From sequence record PQ227241.1: DNA of 64,000 nt, one strand, 5' to 3'. This document shows, in pieces, positions 22,219 through 55,958 of this stretch. Under the pieces are notes generated by a model that was not told the origin of the DNA, did no database searches, and saw only the letters and a list, made by a program, of their open reading frames with translations. Each line of letters starts with the position of its first letter. The first letter of the stretch is position 1. The position numbers and the translations under genes were made by a program.

Positions 22219-23382
22219 ATGTCTACTAAATCTCAACTACCAAAGAAAATCTTCAATGTTGCTAAGAGTGATTATCATCTACCGGAAATTATTCTTGGAG
22301 ATGATCCAGGTCTACTAGATTCAATCCACACTCATTATCCTAAAATGTGGGAGCTATATAAGCGTCTAAAGATGCTTGATTGGGATGAGCTAGAATTTGA
22401 CTTTTCCACTTGTCTAGTAGAATTTGAAACGTGTGATAAATCAACTTATGACATGATGATTAAGACACTGGCCTGGCAATGGGAAGCTGACTCTGTAGCC
22501 AGTCGTTCCATTGTTAATATTCTATCACCTGTCATGACAGATTCACGAGTATGGGCGGGATATGTACGTATTAATGATAATGAAGACGTACATGCTTTAA
22601 CTTATTCTGAAATTGTACGTAATAGCTTTAAAGATCCTAAAGTTATTCTAGACGAAATTCTTAGGGTAGAAGAAGCACAAGAACGAATGGTTGCAGTAGC
22701 CCGCACTATGGGTGAAGCACATGACGCAGTTCATGCGTATGCTCTTAATCAGGTACCCAATGATCAAGAACTTTACAATAAAGTATTCATGTTCTTCATC
22801 GCTCTATATTTCCTAGAACGTATCCAGTTCATGGCATCCTTTGCAGTAACCTTTGCTATTGGTCGTACTGGTGCATTCCAGCAAATTGCAGCCGCTGTTA
22901 AGAAAATTGCCCAAGACGAATTCGAAATCCATGCACAATATGGACAAGAAGTTATTCGTGCACTACTGGCAACTGAACGCGGTAAACTCGCTTACAGTCA
23001 ATGTAAAGATAAAATCATTGAACTACTATGGGAAATTGTAAAGACTGAAGTTACCTGGGTTAATTATCTATTCTCTGAAGGTCGTGAACTAACTGGTGTT
23101 AATGCGACTAAACTTATTAACTGGGTACTTTTCAATGCTAATGCCGCAGCAACATTCCTAAGTATTGAAAATGATGTTGTAGAACAGTATCAAGTGGAGT
23201 TTAAAGAATCAGCTGGATTTGATTTTGTTTGGCCAGAGAAGAACCCACTTCTTTATATGGAAGACTACCTAGATATTTCATCAACCCAAGCATCTCCTCA
23301 GGAAGAAGAGAAGCCTGATTACATGGTCAACGTTGTAAATGATGTTGGTGAAGAAGAAGAATTTGAGGTTGACTTCTTATGA
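22219..23382 (+). CDS. nrdB: Ribonucleotide reductase class Ia beta subunit
   Basis: ADS, EDVHALTY (iron ligands and radical Tyr), LERIQFMASF, QDEFEIH. Confidence 0.95.
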   Translation: MSTKSQLPKKIFNVAKSDYHLPEIILGDDPGLLDSIHTHYPKMWELYKRLKMLDWDELEFDFSTCLVEFETCDKSTYDMMIKTLAWQWEADSVASRSIVNILSPVMTDSRVWAGYVRINDNEDVHALTYSEIVRNSFKDPKVILDEILRVEEAQERMVAVARTMGEAHDAVHAYALNQVPNDQELYNKVFMFFIALYFLERIQFMASFAVTFAIGRTGAFQQIAAAVKKIAQDEFEIHAQYGQEVIRALLATERGKLAYSQCKDKIIELLWEIVKTEVTWVNYLFSEGRELTGVNATKLINWVLFNANAAATFLSIENDVVEQYQVEFKESAGFDFVWPEKNPLLYMEDYLDISSTQASPQEEEKPDYMVNVVNDVGEEEEFEVDFL

Positions 23383-23792
23383 TTAAGATTATCGCATTCG
23401 TAGTTTTAATGTGGTCCACTGTCCTATTTGCAGCAACTGAAGTAAAATCAACTACAGATGGTATTATTGCACATTCAGAATGTCAGCTAGTTGCTAAAGA
23501 TAGTAGTGTTGTCGGCACTACTGTTGGAGGTGCGGTTGGAGCCACCGCAGGCGCTGTGTTAGGTCGAGCAATCTTTGGTAAATCTGGAGGTTGGGTAGGT
23601 GGTTTAATCGGTGGTGCCGCAGGCGGCGCAGTCGGTAATAATGTTAGTGCTACTGAAACATTTCAATGTAAACTGATTGTTAATACAGATGGCAAGCAGT
23701 ACATGGTTCAAACAGTTACCAATGAAAAACCAAAGGTTGGTGATAAAGTCACTGTTGTTGAAATGAATGATGGTACACGAGATATAATGTAG
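23379..23792 (+). CDS. Glycine-zipper 2TM envelope protein (YcfJ/SlyB-like)
   Basis: Signal peptide then GTTVGGAVGATAGAVLG...GGLIGGAAGGAVGN. Confidence 0.75.
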   Translation: MIKIIAFVVLMWSTVLFAATEVKSTTDGIIAHSECQLVAKDSSVVGTTVGGAVGATAGAVLGRAIFGKSGGWVGGLIGGAAGGAVGNNVSATETFQCKLIVNTDGKQYMVQTVTNEKPKVGDKVTVVEMNDGTRDIM

Positions 23793-34424: not shown

Positions 34425-34940
34425 TTAGACGGTGTATAAACCCTCAGTATTACATGTTGTTATGATATTGTAAAGACGATGCCAATAGCGATCATACGTA
34501 TTTTTACGTTTGTAGCTATTGGTGCGGATAATTAGATTGGCGACCCAGTGATTTTTATCAATGGTCTCATGTAGATGCCCGAAATAAACCCCCAGTTCAA
34601 TTTCGAATGGGATCTTACACTCACGCCCCTTACACATTGCTTCACGCAATAAACGCATTACAGAATTCTCTGCATTGGTATCTTGAAATAAAATACTAAT
34701 GTATCCAGGGCTACCACCAGTTTCTTCATCAACATGACCTGAACAGCAATAAATAGTTGCAATATTGGTGAATTGGTTAAACCATTTAATCAATGGTCTA
34801 CATGCTTCATCAATAAGATCTTCATATTCAGGTTTATACATTACTTTAACAGTATCATCTGCCCGTTGTTTCACGTGATGAAAATATTGTTCCCAATTTA
34901 CATTAGTGTAATATAGCATATCCATATTAGAATCACTCAT
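34425..34940 (-). CDS. Hypothetical protein, weak TYW3-like motif
   Basis: IATIYCCSGH...GYISILF recalls TYW3 TxSSCSGR; weak. Confidence 0.45.
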   Translation of the reverse strand: MSDSNMDMLYYTNVNWEQYFHHVKQRADDTVKVMYKPEYEDLIDEACRPLIKWFNQFTNIATIYCCSGHVDEETGGSPGYISILFQDTNAENSVMRLLREAMCKGRECKIPFEIELGVYFGHLHETIDKNHWVANLIIRTNSYKRKNTYDRYWHRLYNIITTCNTEGLYTV

Positions 34941-34945
34941 ACAAA

Positions 34946-35677
34946 TCAACCCCATATGTTATTGGCATATTCGCGGTCATTGAAAATGCAGGTAAGATCC
35001 ATCCGCTTTTGAATACGCGCCAGAATCCATTTTAGTTGTTTAGTTGATAGTTCCTGATTTTGCTTGTACTCACCTGTAGCATGGATGTAATAATCAAATT
35101 TACGACTTACAGTAGTAGTATGTGCACATGCAATAGCAAATGCTTCAAGTGCAGTTAGTTTGGTTGATCCATTATCATTACAATTAGGGATAAACTCAAG
35201 TACACTATTAACTGCATCTACACCACTACCTAAATGAGCCCAATCTTTCTTGGTGATCTCGATACTCATATCTTTAAGAATAACTGTATATATGTCACCA
35301 TTCTCCATAGTGAACATCATAGAAGTATTACCATTAAACAACCTGCGTTCTATGACTGGCATGATATTTACTTCAACTTTAAACCAATCAGCTAAATCAA
35401 CACCTGCGGTAAGGGCATTCAATAGATCATAAACATTATCTATAGTTCCAGCAAAAGCCATAGTTTTAACACGTTTGCCTTGCCAAGTAACAGTCGGATG
35501 AAAAATTATCTTGTGGCAATCATTGTAATATACATCTACACCTTCAGCTTTAGCAGTTAGATCAATATAACCGTTATCTAATACTGGAAGTCGCCCAATG
35601 CTATCAGTTGCATTATTCCGCTCAATTAATAGGCAGTCTGCAATCATGACTTTACCATCATTTACGATATATGTCAT
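34946..35677 (-). CDS. Ntn-hydrolase, proteasome beta/HslV-like
   Basis: AAGGAG RBS points to ATG 35677 giving M-T-YIVNDGKVMIAD (N-terminal Thr); AFAG, HLGSG, LEAFAIAC. Confidence 0.6.
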   Translation of the reverse strand: MTYIVNDGKVMIADCLLIERNNATDSIGRLPVLDNGYIDLTAKAEGVDVYYNDCHKIIFHPTVTWQGKRVKTMAFAGTIDNVYDLLNALTAGVDLADWFKVEVNIMPVIERRLFNGNTSMMFTMENGDIYTVILKDMSIEITKKDWAHLGSGVDAVNSVLEFIPNCNDNGSTKLTALEAFAIACAHTTTVSRKFDYYIHATGEYKQNQELSTKQLKWILARIQKRMDLTCIFNDREYANNIWG

Positions 35678-37526: not shown

Positions 37527-37925
37527 TTAAATACATGTATTTACAGTTACATTGTAACCAGTTAGTTTTGCCAGCAATACGAATGAGCGAACCTGTTCGA
37601 TTTTTTCAGAAACAATGAAAATATGTGTAATACGATCCTCATCAACATACTGATATCGAAATGAAGTATAGCTAAATGACACATCCGTATCGTTTAAATA
37701 AGTGATATTAAAATCATCTACTTCCCTATCAAGCTTACTAAGCTCTGTAAGTAATACTTGATAGGGCGTAATGGTGATACGGTGGTTTTCACAACGTTGA
37801 ATAAGCTGATGTAGTTTAGAAGGCAGTTTATCAACTACCTTTTTATAACTATCATCACATTCTAGAAAGTTATGCGCCAAACCATTGACCGCTGCAACGG
37901 TATTTAAAATGTTAAGTAGACTCAT
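37527..37925 (-). CDS. Hypothetical protein
   Basis: 132 aa, AAGGG RBS. Confidence 0.7.
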   Translation of the reverse strand: MSLLNILNTVAAVNGLAHNFLECDDSYKKVVDKLPSKLHQLIQRCENHRITITPYQVLLTELSKLDREVDDFNITYLNDTDVSFSYTSFRYQYVDEDRITHIFIVSEKIEQVRSFVLLAKLTGYNVTVNTCI

Positions 37926-37949: not shown

Positions 37950-39476
37950 TTAATATTTCAATAGACTATTGATAAAAGCATTAGGGTCATAACGGTTATT
38001 TGAAAAAGCCGCCATTACATCACACCCTGGCTGATCTTTAAATCTGATATCTTCAGGAATATCGAAGTCAGGGAACATTAGTTTAATATACTCCCTAACC
38101 TCTTGATCTCGTAGATATGGAATCTCCACCATGTAATCAACGCGACCTTTCCTTAGAAGTGCTTTATCAATATTCTCAGGATGGTTTGTAGTTAGAATGG
38201 TCATAGTCTCATCTAGTGGAACAATGCCATCTAGCCCATTTAATAGAGCTGACAAAGTTAATCCGCTAGCTGGTTGTTCATACGTGATTCCATTCTTCAT
38301 GCACTTCTTTAATTTCCACCATCGGCGAATTGTGGTAAATAATGGATCTTTTTCATCGGCCCATTTTGAAACACCCAGTTCAGCCATAGCATAAGCACTT
38401 ATCCCAAAACCTTGATCATCGCTATTTTCATCAAAGATATAGATGGTGTCATTAAACCCAACTACAGAGTATCCTTCATAGTCATCTTTAAGATCAACCC
38501 ATGCAGACGGATATTTTTCAATTAAATCAATAAAAGAATATTTCCTCTCTAATTCCTTTATCTCTTTATCTAGTTTTACAGGATCATTTAAAACGCGATC
38601 TTTAACTGCCGGGGTATCATCGAAATCTTCAATTAGAAGAATATTACCTTTAGGTAGTGTAGTAAATGCCCGCCTAAGACTATCATTGGTCATAGAGGCT
38701 AATGACAGTGCACTAACATTTTTATTAAAATGTGAGGCAATCGCTTTACTGATTGAGGTTTTACCAGTACCAGGAGGACCTGTTAGAACACAAGTGAATT
38801 TATAGGGTAGTCCACGATCATCGTACCATTTCCGATCAGAATAGAATTCTTCAATCTTATTAAGGAATTCTTCTTTGATCTCTTTACGCAAAATCACCGT
38901 GTTGATATCGCGTTTAGTAACTTCAATCTCATTGCCCCAACGGTTACCATCCCAATGTGAAATAGTCAGACCCCTTTCATTTGGGCGCCAATGGTAAGCA
39001 TCTACTAAATCAATAATTAGTTTACTACTCCTAGATAATCCACGGATAGTAATATCCATTTGATCTCGACTGGCATTTTGACTATCCCGGCGTGCTTTTA
39101 CAAACCAGAATAACCTACCTTTAAACAGAAAGAAATGTAAGCCAAAACCAACACCAATTTTCTGTTTAGTTGCACTATAACTTTGCTCATCAACATTAGT
39201 TGAAAAACGTCGATTAAATCCAGCTAATGGCTGCTTAATATACCATTCCATGAAACAATCAAAGTTCTTCTCGTTCAGCCCATTACCCATGTTGGTAATA
39301 TGTAGACTAACTGTAAACTGATTTAATGCGAACCTAGCTAGTTTACTTGGTAAGCCTCTTAGAGTGGTCCAGAATAAACCACCAATTGCCATTCCGATAG
39401 CTCCACCCATAACCATATTCTTCTGAGAGATATCGATGAACATGGCGTAATATTGCAATAAGGTTTCTATAATCAT
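37950..39476 (-). CDS. BCS1-like membrane-anchored AAA+ ATPase
   Basis: N-terminal TM helix and BCS1_N-like region; WYDDRGLPY; Walker A GPPGTGKT; Walker B LLIEDFD; TLSALLNGLDG; TTNHPENIDKALLRKGRVD. Confidence 0.85.
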   Translation of the reverse strand: MIIETLLQYYAMFIDISQKNMVMGGAIGMAIGGLFWTTLRGLPSKLARFALNQFTVSLHITNMGNGLNEKNFDCFMEWYIKQPLAGFNRRFSTNVDEQSYSATKQKIGVGFGLHFFLFKGRLFWFVKARRDSQNASRDQMDITIRGLSRSSKLIIDLVDAYHWRPNERGLTISHWDGNRWGNEIEVTKRDINTVILRKEIKEEFLNKIEEFYSDRKWYDDRGLPYKFTCVLTGPPGTGKTSISKAIASHFNKNVSALSLASMTNDSLRRAFTTLPKGNILLIEDFDDTPAVKDRVLNDPVKLDKEIKELERKYSFIDLIEKYPSAWVDLKDDYEGYSVVGFNDTIYIFDENSDDQGFGISAYAMAELGVSKWADEKDPLFTTIRRWWKLKKCMKNGITYEQPASGLTLSALLNGLDGIVPLDETMTILTTNHPENIDKALLRKGRVDYMVEIPYLRDQEVREYIKLMFPDFDIPEDIRFKDQPGCDVMAAFSNNRYDPNAFINSLLKY

Positions 39477-40258
39477 GCTAGCATCCCTCTGGATAGCTTA
39501 GGAAAATATTGTCCACAGATCATGTATTCACGTTCTAGAAAATCTAGAGTATGACTTTCAAATATTTCACCTACATCTTTACCATAGATTTCCGTATACC
39601 CATTTTTGAATACGGCCATTACATAAACATCAGACATAGTCATGCCGTAGTTATAAATTTGATTGTCGCTGTATTTTGGATGAAATAGGTCATATAAAAA
39701 ACGAGTCATTGAACTATTGGCAACAGTTGTCACCCCTTTCTGCTTTAAGGCATAACGTACTTGTTTAACCACATAGTTAACTTTAGAGCGCTCGCCAAAT
39801 ACCGTCAGTTTATCTACATTGCAATTACGATATCCCATAACATCAGGATTAGCTATCACGGTGTGTTTTGGAACACGTACATCAAAGATAATGCCATTAG
39901 GGGATAGAATAATCTTTTCATGGTTAAATAGAACATGAAATAAATGTCGTTCTGGTTTAGTGATTTTGATACTTAACCCAATCACTCCACTAATCTTTCT
40001 TTCTAGATCTTCTAGTGACTGCATCACCATGTGATATTGATTGAAGAAAGCATTGTTCTTATATTGATCTAATTCAAAGTATTTCCAACTTCCACGAAAA
40101 TGAATAGCATGGCTTTTGGTATAACCTTTAGTTAATCGACACTTGAGTTTGTCAAACCAGCTTTCAAGATAACTCTCGACTGTAAAACCAAGTGGGTTAT
40201 TATTAATAAGTTTATTGGAATATGATAAGCTAAATCTGTACATAGTTCGACGATGCAT
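39473..40258 (-). CDS. Hypothetical protein
   Basis: Start set at ATG 40258 behind AGGA; ATGA overlap with ATPase. Confidence 0.7.
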   Translation of the reverse strand: MHRRTMYRFSLSYSNKLINNNPLGFTVESYLESWFDKLKCRLTKGYTKSHAIHFRGSWKYFELDQYKNNAFFNQYHMVMQSLEDLERKISGVIGLSIKITKPERHLFHVLFNHEKIILSPNGIIFDVRVPKHTVIANPDVMGYRNCNVDKLTVFGERSKVNYVVKQVRYALKQKGVTTVANSSMTRFLYDLFHPKYSDNQIYNYGMTMSDVYVMAVFKNGYTEIYGKDVGEIFESHTLDFLEREYMICGQYFPKLSRGMLA

Positions 40259-40287
40259 TTTATATTCCTGCCAAATAAAGAAAAAAT

Positions 40288-40309
40288 AAAGGGCTCCGAA
40301 GAGCCCTTT
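40288..40309 (-). terminator. Intrinsic terminator (UUCG)
   Basis: aaagggctc-cgaa-gagcccttt. Confidence 0.8.
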
Positions 40310-40314
40310 ATGTA

Positions 40315-40929
40315 TTAGATTTTTACAGACCAACTTTGCTCGAATTCCTGATATAGGAAATTGTCTGACGCATTATCCCAATTTTCTCGATCAGTTACAC
40401 CATAATAATGGAATTCTAGTTCAGTAGGTCCACCAACAAAACCATTCTTAGCATAGCTATAAACTTTGCCATTGGTTAGCTTAATCAGTGTATCCACATA
40501 GAAACTATTACGGTTCCATATTTCATTGTGGATGTACTTAAATACCACACTGTGGATATACTTAAATTGCGCACTTGGTTTTCCGAGTACACTCCAATAG
40601 AATTTACGGATACCTATTTCGGTCTTGAAATTAAACTCTCCGTTGCGAATGTTGTTAGAAACAATACGTGCCAGTTTATTAACCCGATTTTCTTCACCGA
40701 TTAGATAGATCCCGGAAACACTACATCCATCTCCTATTGATCCATTATTAACTAGTGGATCAACACCATATTCATCAGTGAAAATGGTTTTGATAACCTC
40801 TTTACCTTCTCGACGCACTAACATATTCAGGTGACCATCTTCGATATATGACATATGGCTAGGCTGAATATATTCACTTGTATCGACGATAACATCACGG
40901 ACACGTACTACACGGAGTGTTTTTGCCAT
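40315..40929 (-). CDS. Hypothetical protein
   Basis: 204 aa, AGGA RBS. Confidence 0.7.
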   Translation of the reverse strand: MAKTLRVVRVRDVIVDTSEYIQPSHMSYIEDGHLNMLVRREGKEVIKTIFTDEYGVDPLVNNGSIGDGCSVSGIYLIGEENRVNKLARIVSNNIRNGEFNFKTEIGIRKFYWSVLGKPSAQFKYIHSVVFKYIHNEIWNRNSFYVDTLIKLTNGKVYSYAKNGFVGGPTELEFHYYGVTDRENWDNASDNFLYQEFEQSWSVKI

Positions 40930-52871: not shown

Positions 52872-53111
52872 TTATTTCTTATAACTCTCAGGGCATCCCA
52901 TTTTGAGTTTGCCATCCTTTGGGTCTTCAGCGAATAATACTTCATCTGGACACTTCTTAACAGGAGTGTCCTTCGCCTTATCTTCCCATTCTACAACAGG
53001 CATTTCTAATTTCTTACGAAATTGATACGTATCATAAAGAACATACGTAATCATTCCCATAAGAGAGATTACCCATACCCATGCAACAATTAGGATGATT
53101 CTAGTTATCAT
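52872..53111 (-). CDS. Small membrane-anchored protein
   Basis: N-terminal TM helix, two Cys in soluble tail. Confidence 0.7.
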   Translation of the reverse strand: MITRIILIVAWVWVISLMGMITYVLYDTYQFRKKLEMPVVEWEDKAKDTPVKKCPDEVLFAEDPKDGKLKMGCPESYKK

Positions 53112-53478
53112 ACAACTCCTCGCCGACTATATTGAAACACCCATTACTGAGTTTTTCAGTCAGCATCTCACCAAGATCACTTCCCTCGCTCTTTGCCAAA
53201 AGCTTAAGTGCGGGATCAGTGAGATTTTGGTATATTACATCGACATTATCCAATGCGATATTAATAGCGAGTGCCTTATCACTCTGGTTTTTATCTATGG
53301 CAATGGATAGTTCATCTTGCAGTATTGCATACATCTCCAATGGCTCACCGCCATTAGTGTAGAATTGAACCATATTCTTTGCCAAGCTGTGCAGCACGTA
53401 GCAAGATGACACGGTTACGGGTTGTGCATTAACCGACATTGCTACCATAGTGATAATGAGCGAGAAGACGTATTTCAT
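53101..53478 (-). CDS. Secreted two-Cys helical protein (array member)
   Basis: Signal peptide MKYVF...VNA; SSCYVL and NGCFNI. Confidence 0.75.
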   Translation of the reverse strand: MKYVFSLIITMVAMSVNAQPVTVSSCYVLHSLAKNMVQFYTNGGEPLEMYAILQDELSIAIDKNQSDKALAINIALDNVDVIYQNLTDPALKLLAKSEGSDLGEMLTEKLSNGCFNIVGEELYDN

Positions 53479-53510
53479 CCTATTTTCCTTTTGAAAGTAT
53501 TCGATATGAA

Positions 53511-53966
53511 TTAAATGAGTTCAACAATTACCATGTGAGTGAATTTCTCACCAATATGCTTCATGCAGTAATTGCCATAATACCCGCTGATAAAAGCTGC
53601 CAGATTAGGAGTAGTCACATTGTAACCTTGACTACGGATATAATCATGGATCTCTTTACTGTTAAGGTCATTATTGATTTTATTAAGACTATTGAATACG
53701 AATGTTAACGCAATCCAATTATTGGTATCCAACTCATCTTTGAGTTTAGCAGAGTTGTTGAGCATAAGCACACCAACTTCATCTGCGCTATGACCTTCAC
53801 TCATTCGAAATACAGCTTGTTTAGTAATGGTTTCAACCATTGCACACGACTGCACAGTGAGTTGAGCATCTTTTTTACCAATCTTGATTTCAGCCATTGC
53901 GGTATTGAACATGATACCGGTAATGGCAATGAGACCAGCGAAAGCTGCTGCAATTACATTTTTCAT
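53511..53966 (-). CDS. Secreted two-Cys helical protein (array member)
   Basis: Signal peptide ending AMA; QSCAMV and NYCMKH. Confidence 0.75.
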   Translation of the reverse strand: MKNVIAAAFAGLIAITGIMFNTAMAEIKIGKKDAQLTVQSCAMVETITKQAVFRMSEGHSADEVGVLMLNNSAKLKDELDTNNWIALTFVFNSLNKINNDLNSKEIHDYIRSQGYNVTTPNLAAFISGYYGNYCMKHIGEKFTHMVIVELI

Positions 53967-53983
53967 TTTAAATCCTTCTTCAT

Positions 53984-54367
53984 TTATTTAATGGTAAGAA
54001 TAGTAATTTTTTCAGGATTTACTGGAACTTTAATTTTAGATTTATGTTGGAGAAACTCAACAACCACCATAGACTTATCCATTTTATACACTTCACATAC
54101 TTTGACAAGCCTATCTACTACGCAACCAATTTTACCGGCATTTTGAGAAAAGAAAGATTTTGCTTTTCTAATAGCCTCGCGTTTCTCAAGCATTTCCATA
54201 CGCATATTTTCAATATGTTTATCGCGTTGAACACGATTAAACTTACGCATATGTCGTTCGATCTTACTAATTTCAGAAGAGTGTAATGAATAAGCAGCAG
54301 CTTCTTTCAGTTTCTCATATACTTCCACTGCCATTACCACGTGATCATCTTCAAAATTTCTTTTCAT
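53984..54367 (-). CDS. Basic hypothetical protein
   Basis: 127 aa, helical N-half and SH3-like C-half. Confidence 0.65.
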   Translation of the reverse strand: MKRNFEDDHVVMAVEVYEKLKEAAAYSLHSSEISKIERHMRKFNRVQRDKHIENMRMEMLEKREAIRKAKSFFSQNAGKIGCVVDRLVKVCEVYKMDKSMVVVEFLQHKSKIKVPVNPEKITILTIK

Positions 54368-54380
54368 ATCTATGCCTTTT

Positions 54381-55175
54381 TCACTGTTTGATTAAATTTG
54401 ACACTGCTTCTTGTTTACATTGAGTATTCATCCATAATGCAATGTCTTTGGGTTCTTGTCCAGTTTCCACCATATCGATAATGATACGGGTATTACGTTG
54501 TGCTTTCTCACGGGCATTTAACATATCAGGATCATTAATAATGAATTCCCTACCCATAACTGGATCTAATCCAATATAAGCTTTAGATGCAATAGTTCTC
54601 ACCATTGCTTCATATTGGTCACATCCACGTTCAGTTAATACAAGGTTATCTGCATTGGCACTACCGCCAAATAGCAAACCTAGGAATCCATAGAAAAAAG
54701 TGTGACGTATTGTCTTCCAACAAATACGCATCTCTTCATTTTTTGTATAAAGCTTTTCCCAATCAAACATTAAATAGAAACTTTCTTTTTGGATAGAAGG
54801 GTGTAACCAAATAGGTTTAATACTTACTTCAAGAAGTTTACTATTTGGATTTTTACCAATAAAGATAACTTCAACAATGGCTCGTGCTAAAGCATCTTTT
54901 TCTTTACCATTCCATCCAAATTTTATTTCATCAGCCGTGATATAAAGACGTATTCCGTCACCCACGTATTTGGGTAACCAAACAGCTTTACCTAGTTGCA
55001 TTGGAACACTATTAGGGATCCCCCCAACCATCCAGGTAGCATTGGTGAAATGAATAGCGACATCATCATTTAACCACTTTAGAATAGCTGGCCTTACCCA
55101 ACTATCTACCAAATTACCACATGTCAATGCAGCTAGCATAGCCATGAGCATAATGACAATATAGATACTAATCAT
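54381..55175 (-). CDS. Membrane protein fused in frame to a secreted two-Cys module
   Basis: N-terminal TM; internal ATG 54731 starts MRICWK...GGSANA signal peptide, then RGCDQY and TQCKQE. Confidence 0.65.
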   Translation of the reverse strand: MISIYIVIMLMAMLAALTCGNLVDSWVRPAILKWLNDDVAIHFTNATWMVGGIPNSVPMQLGKAVWLPKYVGDGIRLYITADEIKFGWNGKEKDALARAIVEVIFIGKNPNSKLLEVSIKPIWLHPSIQKESFYLMFDWEKLYTKNEEMRICWKTIRHTFFYGFLGLLFGGSANADNLVLTERGCDQYEAMVRTIASKAYIGLDPVMGREFIINDPDMLNAREKAQRNTRIIIDMVETGQEPKDIALWMNTQCKQEAVSNLIKQ

Positions 55176-55178
55176 AGT

Positions 55179-55538
55179 CTACTCCAAGTTAAATTTAGTA
55201 CCAATTGCTTCAACACAATTTTCAGCTAACCTATCTAGGATAGCTCCATTGGTAAATCCTTTTCGTTTATTTACTCGAATATCAACTAAGTTTAACTTGG
55301 CATATACCGCACCTGCATAGAACTCCAAGTCATCCATATCCTTACGAGAGATCATGTCTAACTGCATCATTATCTCAAATTGGGATAGGTTCTTATCATA
55401 AAGCTCAGTTGCTTTTTGTGAAAGATTTACTGCCACATTACATGATTTCTTAGTAATACCCACTTCTACAGCGTGGGCAGGCTGACATGCAATGGACAGG
55501 ATTGGCAGGAAAAGGAATAATAGCCAATTCTTAAGCAT
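55179..55538 (-). CDS. Secreted two-Cys helical protein (array member)
   Basis: Signal peptide ending AHA; KSCNVA and ENCVEA. Confidence 0.75.
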   Translation of the reverse strand: MLKNWLLFLFLPILSIACQPAHAVEVGITKKSCNVAVNLSQKATELYDKNLSQFEIMMQLDMISRKDMDDLEFYAGAVYAKLNLVDIRVNKRKGFTNGAILDRLAENCVEAIGTKFNLE

Positions 55539-55550
55539 GTTGTACCTCCA

Positions 55551-55958
55551 TTATTTTAGAGTAAGTGGTTTTGCTTCAAACGCACCTGCCGCTACACAAC
55601 GCTGGAAATAACCATCAATGATGAATTTCTCAGGAGTGGTCTTATAGACTTTAGCAGCATTTGTTGCACGTGGCAAACTTGCCTCAATTGCCATTTTATC
55701 TACCTTAGACCATAGGTAAAATAGACCAGTGAGTTCTTCAACTTTAGACTGGTTGGTCTTTAGATCTTTAGTGTTATTAAGGATATAATGAATCCTTTCA
55801 TAAGTCTTCATTTGCACTTCAGTTACAGATGCACCTTTTACAAACAATTCATCTGCCTGTTTTACAAACTCGATGCATGAATCACGATTAGTGTACATGA
55901 CAGCCGAGTTAGCAGTGATAGTTACAATAGACAACATAAATGCAATTACATATTTCAT
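55551..55958 (-). CDS. Secreted two-Cys helical protein (array member)
   Basis: Signal peptide MKYVI...ANSA; DSCIEF and QRCVAA. Confidence 0.75.
   Translation of the reverse strand: MKYVIAFMLSIVTITANSAVMYTNRDSCIEFVKQADELFVKGASVTEVQMKTYERIHYILNNTKDLKTNQSKVEELTGLFYLWSKVDKMAIEASLPRATNAAKVYKTTPEKFIIDGYFQRCVAAGAFEAKPLTLK

What the first reader, a model, noticed from the sequence alone, without database searches (positions are those of the whole stretch)
37950..39476. Full-length BCS1-like membrane ATPase in a phage
Seen: not only the AAA core but the whole BCS1 layout: N-terminal TM helix, LARFALNQFTVSLHI, FMEWY, GFGLHFFLFKGRLFW, W-x-KRDINTVIL, WYDDRGLPY, plus an insertion of about 110 aa after Walker B. 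Established: mitochondrial Bcs1 is a ring ATPase that pushes a folded protein (Rieske Fe-S) across the inner membrane. Inference: a phage-encoded translocase or extractase for folded proteins at the inner membrane or early phage vesicle. The coupled upstream gene (39473-40258) and the secreted two-Cys array are candidate partners. BCS1-like genes may already be annotated in some phages; function is unknown to me.
Basis: partly seen in the sequence, partly recalled or inferred. Interest (0 to 1): 0.7.

Follow-up and report, generated by a model that had tools for sequence, protein, structure and literature searches.

The report
Phage Bcs1-type membrane ATPase, early gene
This phiKZ-type giant phage really does encode a full-length relative of the mitochondrial Bcs1 ATPase, which moves a folded protein across a membrane; the phage gene is switched on in the first minutes of infection with a lineage-specific partner gene, its cargo is unknown, and such genes in jumbo phages were already reported in 2021.

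Summary
Window 37950-39476(-) encodes a 508-aa protein, the ortholog of phiKZ gp286 (98% identity). It passes Pfam's BCS1_N cutoff over the whole profile. It has an intact AAA domain with the Bcs1-type 'ED' Walker B. Its best sequence and fold matches among solved structures are yeast and mouse Bcs1. About 102 extra residues sit after Walker B.

New here:
- The large insertion occurs only in the phiKZ/PhiPA3/PS119XW clade.
- Only that clade has the translationally coupled upstream gene family (gp285).
- Published RNA-seq shows genes 285 and 286 are early: they peak at 5-10 min and persist when nucleus formation is blocked.
- The residues with which Bcs1 holds the Rieske protein are not conserved.
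- The gene is absent from the nucleus-forming phages 201phi2-1 and Goslar, and present in phages not known to form a nucleus.

Most likely it is a membrane-anchored ring ATPase that handles a folded, non-Rieske cargo early in infection, as an accessory function. Knockdown lowers ChmA but not plaque counts. Translocation, membrane anchoring and ring size are all inferred.

Iyer et al. (2021) already reported BCS1 orthologs in jumbo phages. The proposed link to the secreted two-Cys proteins is unsupported.

The parts
37950..39476 (-). CDS of the Bcs1-family AAA ATPase, 508 aa; ortholog of phiKZ gp286 (PHIKZ286)
   Evidence: ORF. tblastn gives 100% identity to PA7 and others and 98.2% to phiKZ 259685-261208. 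PHROG 7485, E 8e-182.
39360..39416 (-). Residues 21-39, the putative single membrane anchor (MVMGGAIGMAIGGLFWTTL). It follows an amphipathic helix (1-19) and is followed by R40, K45 and R48.
   Evidence: It is the most hydrophobic 19-mer of the protein (KD 1.5). It is conserved in position in 34 of 35 aligned sequences (33 phage or metagenomic homologs plus the query), with positive residues after it. AF2 models one continuous helix over 21-54. Crude insertion energy is +2.0, against +7.45 for the rest of the protein. The anchor is inferred, not shown.
38895..39380 (-). BCS1_N (Bcs1-specific middle) domain, residues 33-194
   Evidence: PF08740 scores 44.1 bits against a cutoff of 28.1, over the full profile length. 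Six-frame search of phiKZ gives 46.5 bits.
38616..38894 (-). First part of the AAA domain, residues 195-287. It includes Walker A GPPGTGKTS (233-241; 38754-38780) and the Walker B ILLIEDFD with the 'ED' signature (279-286; 38619-38642).
   Evidence: In 103 sequences G233, G236, G238 and K239 are invariant, E283 is E in 102 and D284 is D in 98.
38271..38615 (-). Clade-specific insertion, residues 288-402, between Walker B and the helix LSALLNGLDG. In classical AAA proteins this is the pore-loop-2 position.
   Evidence: It has no counterpart in Bcs1. Linker length is 120-125 aa in phiKZ, PhiPA3, P0004 and P0005, against 18-72 aa in 31 other homologs. It is modelled as helices plus a hairpin with pLDDT 58-90. 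Identity to relatives is 9-28%, against 58-72% in the AAA core. The atlas search found no recognisable relatives.
37953..38270 (-). Second part of the AAA domain plus lid, residues 403-508. Sensor-1 is N431 and the arginine fingers are R442 and R445 (38142-38192).
   Evidence: N431, R442, G444 and R445 are invariant in 103 sequences. Aligned to Bcs1 337-403.
39473..40258 (-). Upstream coupled gene, 261 aa; ortholog of phiKZ gp285 (PHROG 24803). Candidate partner, adaptor or cargo.
   Evidence: It has no Pfam family. Its stop overlaps the ATPase start. Homologs sit immediately upstream of the ATPase in all five insertion-bearing loci (hhalign 94.6%, E 7e-8) and in none of eight other loci. In Fossati 2023 it lies in the same SEC fractions as gp286.
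40275..40311 (-). Intrinsic terminator between gp284 and gp285: an 11-bp stem, TTCG loop and T-run
   Evidence: Pattern scan and sequence. In RNA run X5 a 115-nt contig (40283-40397) with depth 2822 ends just after the hairpin, against depth 398 upstream and 162 downstream. Published counts for 285 are about 6-8 times lower than for 284, with the same time course.

Best explanation
The gene encodes a genuine Bcs1-family AAA ATPase, the ortholog of phiKZ gp286. Shown: it has the Bcs1-specific N-domain, a catalytically intact AAA domain with the family's 'ED' Walker B, no canonical threading pore loop, and the Bcs1 fold. Shown from published data: it is transcribed in the first 5-10 minutes together with the translationally coupled gp285, by read-through of a terminator in an early operon. 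The protein is made, sediments as a large assembly, and its knockdown lowers ChmA without lowering plaque counts. Inferred: the N-terminal hydrophobic helix anchors a ring in the cytoplasmic membrane, or in the early infection vesicle membrane, with the N-terminus outside and the ATPase chamber in the cytoplasm. By analogy with Bcs1, nucleotide-driven contraction of that chamber would then push a folded protein cargo into or across the membrane, without unfolding it. The cargo is not a Rieske protein, because the Rieske-contact residues are not kept. The roughly 102-aa insertion sits where the loops lining the chamber mouth lie. It arose in the same clade as gp285, so gp285 most likely docks there as adaptor, regulator or cargo. 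The function is accessory rather than essential.
For: Family membership: PF08740 above its cutoff over the full profile. Yeast Bcs1 is the best PDB sequence hit, E 4e-38, over both domains. The Foldseek top 17 hits are all Bcs1. Walker A, E283/D284, N431 and R442/R445 are invariant or nearly so. 'ED' is a Bcs1/YjoB signature. The pore-loop-1 region LASMTNDS has no aromatic-hydrophobic-Gly motif, as in Bcs1. Anchor: the hydrophobic helix is conserved in position and has positive residues after it. All of the 150 listed hits (349 clusters in all) start at residues 1-35 of the protein, most at 2-20, and the full-length ones are 405-545 aa. Timing: control-ASO counts at 5, 10, 15, 20 and 30 min are 3542, 4784, 1564, 955, 1012 for 286 and 2168, 2532, 783, 398, 305 for 285. 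Both stay high under chmA knockdown. Assembly: 'ATPases PhiKZ208/-286 sedimented in HMW fractions', and 285 and 286 both fall in the 70S-size SEC fractions. Phenotype: ChmA '++' reduced, PFU unchanged. Partner: ATGA overlap. The gp285 family is present in 5 of 5 insertion-bearing loci and 0 of 8 others. Cargo differs: yeast E212-W213-R214 corresponds to R179-W180-G181, and D300-D301-R302 to N264-D265-S266. Across 103 phage homologs only the W (99 of 103) and the first D (70 D, 25 N) are kept.
Against: No experiment shows membrane insertion, a ring of seven, or any translocated cargo. The anchor is only marginally hydrophobic. The gp286-gp285 complex prediction gave no answer. The co-occurrence of insertion and gp285 reflects a single clade, hence one evolutionary event, so it is not independent evidence. 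The insertion is poorly conserved and could be a tolerated loop expansion. Crosslinks of 286 to L7/L12, L10 and L11, and of 285 to L29, point to ribosomes rather than to a membrane cargo. The soluble bacterial relative YjoB uses a similar chamber as a chaperone without any membrane.
Confidence: 0.5

Rival explanations
1. Chamber chaperone or remodeller that does not move anything across the membrane. Like B. subtilis YjoB, the ring would hold or reshape folded proteins in its cytoplasmic chamber. Alternatively it would extract or disable host inner-membrane proteins as part of host takeover or counter-defence, with the N-terminal helix only placing it at the membrane.
For: YjoB is the next-best fold match after Bcs1 (E 6e-15) and is described as a chamber chaperone. 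The gene is early, non-core and dispensable for plaques on PAO1. It is patchily distributed across unrelated large phages. It sits among small ORFan genes, a layout typical of host-takeover regions. This is the pattern expected of accessory or conflict genes.
Against: The protein matches Bcs1 better than YjoB in both sequence and fold. It keeps the N-terminal hydrophobic helix that YjoB lacks. PADLOC and NCBIfam defence models match only the generic P-loop region.
Confidence: 0.2
2. Ribosome-associated factor. Here gp285 and gp286 would bind host ribosomes, possibly tethering them at the membrane or early vesicle where early phage mRNAs emerge, and so boost early phage translation.
For: SEC-MS places 285 and 286 with the 70S ribosome. 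XL-MS links 286 to rplL, rplK and rplJ, and 285 to rpmC. Knockdown of 286 lowers the early protein ChmA. Another early phiKZ protein, gp014, binds ribosomes and is reported at the early vesicle.
Against: A ring of seven 58-kDa subunits (about 400 kDa, more with gp285 or detergent and lipid) can co-elute with ribosomes by size alone. L7/L12 is abundant, flexible and lysine-rich, so it crosslinks readily. Nothing in the Bcs1 fold is known to bind ribosomes. The Grad-seq paper lists 286 only as sedimenting in high-molecular-weight fractions.
Confidence: 0.15
3. Membrane-proximal virion assembly chaperone. As Iyer et al. [quoted passage not shown]
For: Published hypothesis. Bcs1 is an assembly factor in mitochondria.
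Against: In phiKZ the transcripts peak at 5-10 min and have fallen 4- to 10-fold by 20-30 min, while the major head protein rises to its maximum at 30 min. Knockdown does not reduce plaques. The RefSeq record tags gp286 with RNA-seq evidence, whereas structural proteins such as gp120 and gp146 carry virion mass-spectrometry evidence. phiKZ-type capsid assembly is not known to be membrane-bound (own knowledge).
Confidence: 0.1

Closest known systems
Mitochondrial Bcs1 / BCS1L (yeast 6SH3, 9GS2; mouse 6UKO, 8TP1)
   Same: Same order of parts: N-terminal helix, Bcs1-specific domain, then a single AAA domain. Same 'ED' Walker B, sensor-1 and arginine fingers, and no canonical pore loop 1. It is the best sequence hit (E 4e-38) and the best fold hit (E 2.8e-26; target-normalised TM up to 0.72 for whole chains and 0.80 for the AAA domain).
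   Different: The host is a bacterium whose own Rieske protein uses Tat (established knowledge). The Rieske-contact residues E212, R214, D300 and R302 are replaced. About 102 extra residues follow Walker B. It has a dedicated co-translated partner gene. It has no N-terminal presequence region: the homology starts at residue 2-20. Ring size and cargo are unknown.
BCS1 orthologs of jumbo phages (Iyer, Anantharaman, Krishnan, Burroughs, Aravind 2021; PHROG 7485)
   Same: This gene belongs to that set. It matches PHROG 7485 at E 8e-182. The paper reports BCS1 orthologs in all three jumbo-phage groups and suggests translocation of folded proteins.
   Different: The PHROG profile lacks the insertion: the query spans 3-507 against profile positions 2-414 of 430. 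The paper proposes a virion-assembly role, but the early timing in phiKZ argues against that. It does not describe gp285, the insertion or the loss of the Rieske-contact motifs.
Bacillus subtilis YjoB (7W42)
   Same: Bcs1-like N-domain plus an AAA domain with an 'ED' Walker B, and an internal chamber. It is the second-best fold family (E 6e-15).
   Different: YjoB is a soluble hexamer without any membrane or amphipathic helix and is restricted to Bacillales. The phage protein matches Pfam BCS1_N directly and keeps the N-terminal hydrophobic helix.
FtsH (the product name given in some GenBank records of this gene)
   Same: A membrane-anchored classical AAA domain. There is a partial NCBIfam FtsH match over residues 407-462.
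   Different: It scores 44.8 bits against a cutoff of 600. It has no M41 protease domain and one rather than two membrane helices. The FtsH name is a mis-annotation.

Membership tests
Bcs1 family of AAA ATPases | Bcs1-specific N-terminal (middle) domain, Pfam BCS1_N PF08740 | tested here: met
   44.1 bits against a gathering cutoff of 28.1, residues 33-194, profile 2-182 of 182. The six-frame search gives 46.5 bits in phiKZ.
Bcs1 family of AAA ATPases | Single C-terminal classical AAA domain with intact Walker A, sensor-1 and arginine fingers | tested here: met
   PF00004 E 1.5e-16. G233, G236, G238, K239, N431, R442 and R445 are invariant in 103 homologs.
Bcs1 family of AAA ATPases | Walker B reads 'ED' instead of the usual 'DE' | tested here: met
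   ILLIE283D284FD aligns with yeast ILLLEDID. E is present in 102 of 103 and D in 98 of 103 sequences. The signature is described in PMC9565160.
Bcs1 family of AAA ATPases | No canonical aromatic-hydrophobic-Gly pore loop 1 (a non-threading motor) | tested here: met
   The region after strand 2 is L259-ASMTNDS-266, aligned to yeast LSenNLTDDR. The absence of this loop in Bcs1 is stated in PMC7994207.
Bcs1 family of AAA ATPases | Overall fold of the protomer matches solved Bcs1 | tested here: met
   AF2 model with pLDDT 90.4. The Foldseek PDB top 17 hits are all Bcs1, E from 2.8e-26 to 8.6e-16.
Bcs1 family of AAA ATPases | Single N-terminal transmembrane helix, with the N-terminus on the far side and the ATPase on the near (matrix or cytoplasmic) side | tested here: inconclusive
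   A hydrophobic helix at 21-39 is conserved in position, with positive charges after it. Its hydrophobicity is marginal: KD 1.5 and crude insertion energy +2.0, with a family median of +3.2. No localisation data were found.
Bcs1 family of AAA ATPases | Homo-heptameric ring with two vestibules and a seal | not testable with these tools
   Seven copies (3556 residues) exceed the complex-prediction limit. Published Grad-seq and SEC data show only that it is in a high-mass assembly.
Bcs1 family of AAA ATPases | Rieske-cargo contact motifs EWR (E212-R214) and DDR (D300-R302) | tested here: not met
   They correspond to R179-W180-G181 and N264-D265-S266. Only the W and, in most homologs, the first D are kept. 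The protein is therefore a family member by architecture but not a Rieske translocase.
Bcs1 family of AAA ATPases | ATP-driven passage of a folded protein across a membrane | not testable with these tools
   This needs biochemistry. No cargo is known.
FtsH | AAA domain followed by an M41 zinc protease domain; NCBIfam FtsH equivalog score | tested here: not met
   TIGR01241 scores 44.8 bits against a cutoff of 600, and there is no peptidase domain among the Pfam hits.
Anti-phage ATPases IetA / IteA (PADLOC, NCBIfam) | Full-length match to the defence-system ATPase models | tested here: not met
   The matches cover only residues about 184-254, around the P-loop. The best is 40.6 bits for PADLOC IetA. 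NF042959 scores 28.4 bits against a cutoff of 510.
YjoB-type soluble chamber chaperones | No membrane or amphipathic N-terminal helix; closest relatives in Bacillales | tested here: not met
   The phage protein has the N-terminal hydrophobic helix. It matches Bcs1 better than YjoB: E 4e-38 against 7e-17 in sequence, and 2.8e-26 against 5.9e-15 in fold.

The most novel reading that the evidence does not exclude
gp285 and gp286 together would be the first Bcs1-type folded-protein gate working outside mitochondria. It would be made within minutes of infection and set in the host inner membrane or the early infection vesicle, whose transport machinery is still unknown. gp285 would dock on the clade-specific insertion as cargo adaptor. 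The gate would move folded phage proteins from the cytoplasm to the far side of that membrane. A corollary follows. The full architecture is common in large phages. A motif scan tuned to the phage type found it in none of 185,579 prokaryote species genomes. Phages may therefore be the source of mitochondrial Bcs1, as is accepted for the mitochondrial RNA polymerase and Twinkle (own knowledge).
Probability: 0.15. Interest if true: 0.85.

Novelty: new member of a known kind. Interest (0 to 1): 0.45.

Why it matters
Bcs1 is the only AAA ATPase known to carry a folded protein across a membrane, and it has only been studied in mitochondria. A phage version made within five minutes of infection, with its own partner gene, would give a simple bacterial system for that mechanism. 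Such a version exists in a model phage that can be knocked down with antisense oligomers or Cas13 tools. It could also identify a folded-protein route at the host membrane or the early infection vesicle, where no transport machinery is known yet. Three omics papers have handled phiKZ gp286 as an 'uncharacterized' protein or plain 'ATPase'. Recognising it as Bcs1-like turns their observations into a testable hypothesis. Those observations are high-mass sedimentation, ribosome-size co-fractionation with gp285, and lower ChmA on knockdown. The value is limited by three facts. The family was already reported in jumbo phages. The gene is non-core. It is dispensable for plaque formation on PAO1.

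Tried and rejected
1. Complex prediction of gp286 with gp285. The second attempt used permitted rows and returned 'no answer' (score 0.00). It counts as no evidence either way.

2. gp285 structure. The AF2 model from a 4-sequence alignment reached only pLDDT 61.7. That is too poor for a fold search, so none was run. gp285 has no Pfam family, and only PhiPA3 gp346 turned up as a database relative.

3. Atlas search with the insertion alone. The best score was 0.55, far below the useful range.

4. Neighbourhood clues. Ten neighbouring ORFs have no Pfam family apart from one sub-threshold hit (TYW3, 17.9 bits against a cutoff of 27). Loci of distant homologs show only small ORFan genes and no recurrent partner.

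5. Early-promoter motif TATATTAC (recalled from memory). It gave 12 matches against 6.4 expected, none near genes 284-286, so it was dropped.

6. Phylogeny against eukaryotic Bcs1. The candidates P0091, P0094, P0113 and P0120 are not true Bcs1 orthologs: they score at most 133 bits to solved Bcs1. No reliable eukaryotic set was in hand, so no tree was built.

7. The first attempt at the genome-collection scan failed because the 35-sequence alignment was too diverse. It was repeated with 8 sequences.

8. Sampling a bacterial phylum for PF08740 was not possible, because no suitable genome handle was available.

9. Further fold searches (viral library, AFDB) were not accepted at the time.

10. 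Three papers could not be read because they are not held: Ceyssens 2014, Tang 2020 and the journal version of the EPI vesicle paper.

11. Rejected identities: FtsH, defence ATPases (IetA/IteA, TRIP13) and a clamp loader. All of these match only the generic P-loop or AAA part.
Full report
WHAT IS THERE

The window comes from a phiKZ-type jumbo phage of Pseudomonas aeruginosa. The ORF at 37950-39476 on the minus strand (508 aa) is 100% identical to the corresponding protein of PA7, PA02 and many other isolates. It is 98.2% identical to phiKZ gp286 (PHIKZ286, NC_004629 259685-261211).

Pfam finds BCS1_N (PF08740) at 44.1 bits, above the gathering cutoff of 28.1, over residues 33-194 and the whole profile (2-182 of 182). 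It also finds an AAA domain split into 230-288 and about 407-480.

Against all solved structures, the best sequence matches are yeast Bcs1 (E 4e-38) and mouse Bcs1. They align over residues 27-287 and 403-469.

An AlphaFold2 model built from 103 homologs is confident (pLDDT 90.4, pTM 0.81). Its 17 best Foldseek matches in the PDB are all Bcs1 chains (E 2.8e-26 to 8.6e-16), followed by B. subtilis YjoB.

Walker A, the catalytic E283-D284, sensor-1 N431 and the arginine fingers R442 and R445 are invariant or nearly so in 103 homologs. The 'ED' order in Walker B is a signature shared by Bcs1 and YjoB. Like Bcs1, the protein lacks the aromatic pore loop used by threading AAA motors.

THE MEMBRANE ANCHOR

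Residues 21-39 are the only hydrophobic stretch. In 34 of 35 aligned sequences (33 phage or metagenomic homologs plus the query) a stretch like it lies at the same place. It follows a short amphipathic helix and is followed by Arg/Lys-x-x-Pro and further positive charges. AlphaFold models a continuous helix over 21-54, as in Bcs1. By the positive-inside rule, the bulk of the protein would face the cytoplasm.

An exhaustive search with residues 1-200 found 349 clusters. Every listed match starts at residues 1-35 of the hit protein (most at 2-20). The full-length hits are 405-545 aa, so the architecture is uniform.

The segment is glycine-rich and only marginally hydrophobic. Kyte-Doolittle is 1.5. 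A crude insertion energy is +2.0 kcal/mol, with a family median of +3.2 and +7.45 for the most hydrophobic segment elsewhere in these proteins. Membrane anchoring is thus likely but inferred.

THE INSERTION AND THE UPSTREAM GENE

Between Walker B and the helix LSALLNGLDG the protein has 115 residues where yeast Bcs1 has 13. This linker is a length hotspot:
- 18 aa in a fungal relative.
- 22-72 aa in 30 other phage or metagenomic homologs.
- 120-125 aa only in phiKZ, PhiPA3 and two metagenomic relatives.
- The one-piece tblastn match suggests PS119XW has it too.

In classical AAA proteins this is the pore-loop-2 position, facing the central chamber (established knowledge). Seven copies of a 12-kDa insert would most likely crown the cytoplasmic mouth of the chamber. 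That placement is inference, since no coordinates could be inspected.

The insert is modelled as helices plus a hairpin at moderate confidence. It has no recognisable relatives. It evolves fast, with 9-28% identity against 58-72% in the AAA core.

The upstream gene (39473-40258, the gp285 ortholog) ends in a TGA that overlaps the ATPase start codon. tblastn finds it only in phiKZ-like phages and PhiPA3. However, a gene of 250-275 aa sits directly upstream of the ATPase in all five insertion-bearing loci, and profile comparison shows these are one family (hhalign 94.6%, E 7e-8).

An HMM of that family finds nothing in eight loci whose ATPase has a shorter linker. The upstream genes in the five of those loci tested are unrelated to it.

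The partner family and the large insertion therefore arose together. Because this is one clade, it counts as one event and not as statistical proof of an interaction. Complex prediction gave no answer.

EXPRESSION AND PUBLISHED DATA ON PHIKZ GP286

Between gp284 and gp285 lies a strong terminator hairpin, with only about 17 nt before the gp285 ribosome-binding site. In one public RNA-seq run a 115-nt contig ends just after this hairpin. Its depth is 2822, against 398 upstream and 162 downstream. Contigs from four runs cover 285-286.

The source data of Gerovac et al. 2025 give read counts under the control antisense oligomer at 5, 10, 15, 20 and 30 min:
- Gene 286: 3542, 4784, 1564, 955, 1012.
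- Gene 285: 2168, 2532, 783, 398, 305.
- Gene 284: about 6-8 times higher than 285, with the same shape.
- The major head protein peaks at 30 min.

When ChmA is knocked down and infection stalls at the vesicle stage, 285 and 286 stay high. They are therefore early genes, expressed by partial read-through of an early operon.

The same paper lists 286 as 'Uncharacterized' and non-core. Its knockdown leaves plaque and colony counts unchanged but reduces ChmA ('++').

Gerovac et al. 2024 report that 'ATPases PhiKZ208/-286 sedimented in HMW fractions'.

Fossati et al. 2023 place both 285 and 286 in the 70S-size SEC fractions. They find crosslinks of 286 to L7/L12, L10 and L11, and of 285 to L29.

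None of these papers recognises the Bcs1 relationship.

DISTRIBUTION

Relatives occur in 156 phage records. These include phiKZ-like phages (PhiPA3, Noxifer, RSL2, Moabite, PS119XW). They also include phages outside that group: the 142-kb Vequintavirinae phage phiTE, siphoviruses of Brevundimonas, Citromicrobium and Dinoroseobacter, and Salicola SCTP-2.

A six-frame BCS1_N search is positive in phiKZ but negative in the well-studied nucleus-forming phages 201phi2-1 and Goslar, and in 14 control cellular genomes.

A scan of one genome from each of 185,579 prokaryote species, using two motifs typical of the phage family, found only one short MAG contig. That contig matches only the AAA part, and its genome has no BCS1_N. 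The scan is limited to those motifs.

The gene is thus a patchily distributed accessory gene of large phages, not part of the shared nucleus or early-vesicle toolkit.

CARGO SITE

[quoted passage not shown] E212A, D300A and R302A are lethal under respiratory conditions.

In the alignment these positions are a gap, R179-W180-G181 and N264-D265-S266. Across 103 phage homologs only the tryptophan (99 of 103) and the first aspartate (70 D, 25 N) are kept, and the other positions vary. The cargo is therefore not a Rieske-type protein and may differ between phages.

MOST LIKELY MECHANISM

Shown: a catalytically intact Bcs1-family ATPase is made early with a coupled partner, is present in a large assembly, and is helpful but not essential.

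Inferred: a ring anchored by its N-terminal helices, with its ATPase chamber in the cytoplasm. Nucleotide-driven contraction of the chamber would push a folded cargo into or across the inner membrane or the early-vesicle membrane, from the cytoplasm to the far side. gp285 would act at the insertion as adaptor, regulator or cargo. I put this at about 0.5.

The rivals are:
- A membrane-placed chamber chaperone or remodeller of host proteins (0.2).
- A ribosome-associated factor, which the crosslinks and the ChmA phenotype fit (0.15).
- The published virion-assembly idea, which the early timing and the lack of a plaque phenotype argue against (0.1).

The ribosome crosslinks can also be explained by a membrane or vesicle surface crowded with translating ribosomes, or by co-elution on size alone.

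COMPARISON AND NOVELTY

Iyer et al. 2021 already reported BCS1 orthologs in all three jumbo-phage groups and suggested translocation of folded proteins. Some GenBank records already carry names such as 'mitochondrial chaperone BCS1'. The core of the finding is therefore known.

Five points appear to be new. Within the searchable library, no paper names gp286 as BCS1-like.
- The identification of phiKZ gp286 itself as Bcs1-like.
- The insertion-plus-gp285 module, restricted to one clade.
- The early timing, which contradicts the assembly hypothesis.
- The loss of the Rieske-contact motifs.
- The absence of the gene from Goslar and 201phi2-1.

Those small proteins (about 53101-55958, minus strand) have ordinary Sec-type signal peptides and lie 14 kb away.

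Noticed in passing
window 53101-55958 (-), also 23379-23792 (+): Several small ORFs (119-151 aa) have Sec-type signal peptides and 2-3 cysteines, for example MKYVFSLIITMVAMSVNAQP... and MKNVIAAAFAGLIAITGIMFNTAMAE.... One of them (55179-55538) has a Cys soon after the hydrophobic core and might be a lipoprotein.
   Followed up: partly
window 37728-37880, downstream of the ATPase: phiKZ-type RNA contigs from four runs skip 153 bases here. The window's phage therefore has a longer small gene after the ATPase (37527-37925, 132 aa, PHROG 32461) than phiKZ, which has a 62-aa gp286.1. A 36-base difference also lies inside the gp284 ortholog (40526-40561).
   Followed up: no
window 40283-40397 (-): In RNA run X5 a 115-nt contig covers the 3' end of the gp284 ortholog plus the terminator hairpin. 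Its depth is 2822, 7-17 times that of its flanks. This may be a stable 3'-end fragment or a small RNA derived from the early operon.
   Followed up: no
protein P0027 (metagenomic homolog, 807 aa): A BCS1_N + AAA homolog carries a LAGLIDADG_3 domain (PF14528) between the two domains, and its contig is 117 kb. It looks like an intein or homing-endonuclease insertion inside a phage Bcs1 gene.
   Followed up: no
L009:4575-4964, just upstream of the BCS1 homolog at L009:5001-6374: In one metagenomic phage contig the gene immediately upstream of the Bcs1 homolog is a DUF1289 protein. From memory, this is a small family with four conserved cysteines, thought to bind iron-sulfur. That is curious, given that mitochondrial Bcs1 carries an iron-sulfur protein.
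   Followed up: no
GenBank records PQ093904.1, ON631220.1, MT995928.1: The gp286 ortholog is named 'ATP-dependent zinc metalloprotease FtsH' in some records, and the gp285 ortholog 'capsid decoration protein' in one. Neither name is supported by the domain searches.
   Followed up: yes
window 34425-34955 (-): The gp290 ortholog gives a weak, sub-threshold Pfam hit to the TYW3 methyltransferase (E 0.002, 17.9 bits against a cutoff of 27).
   Followed up: no
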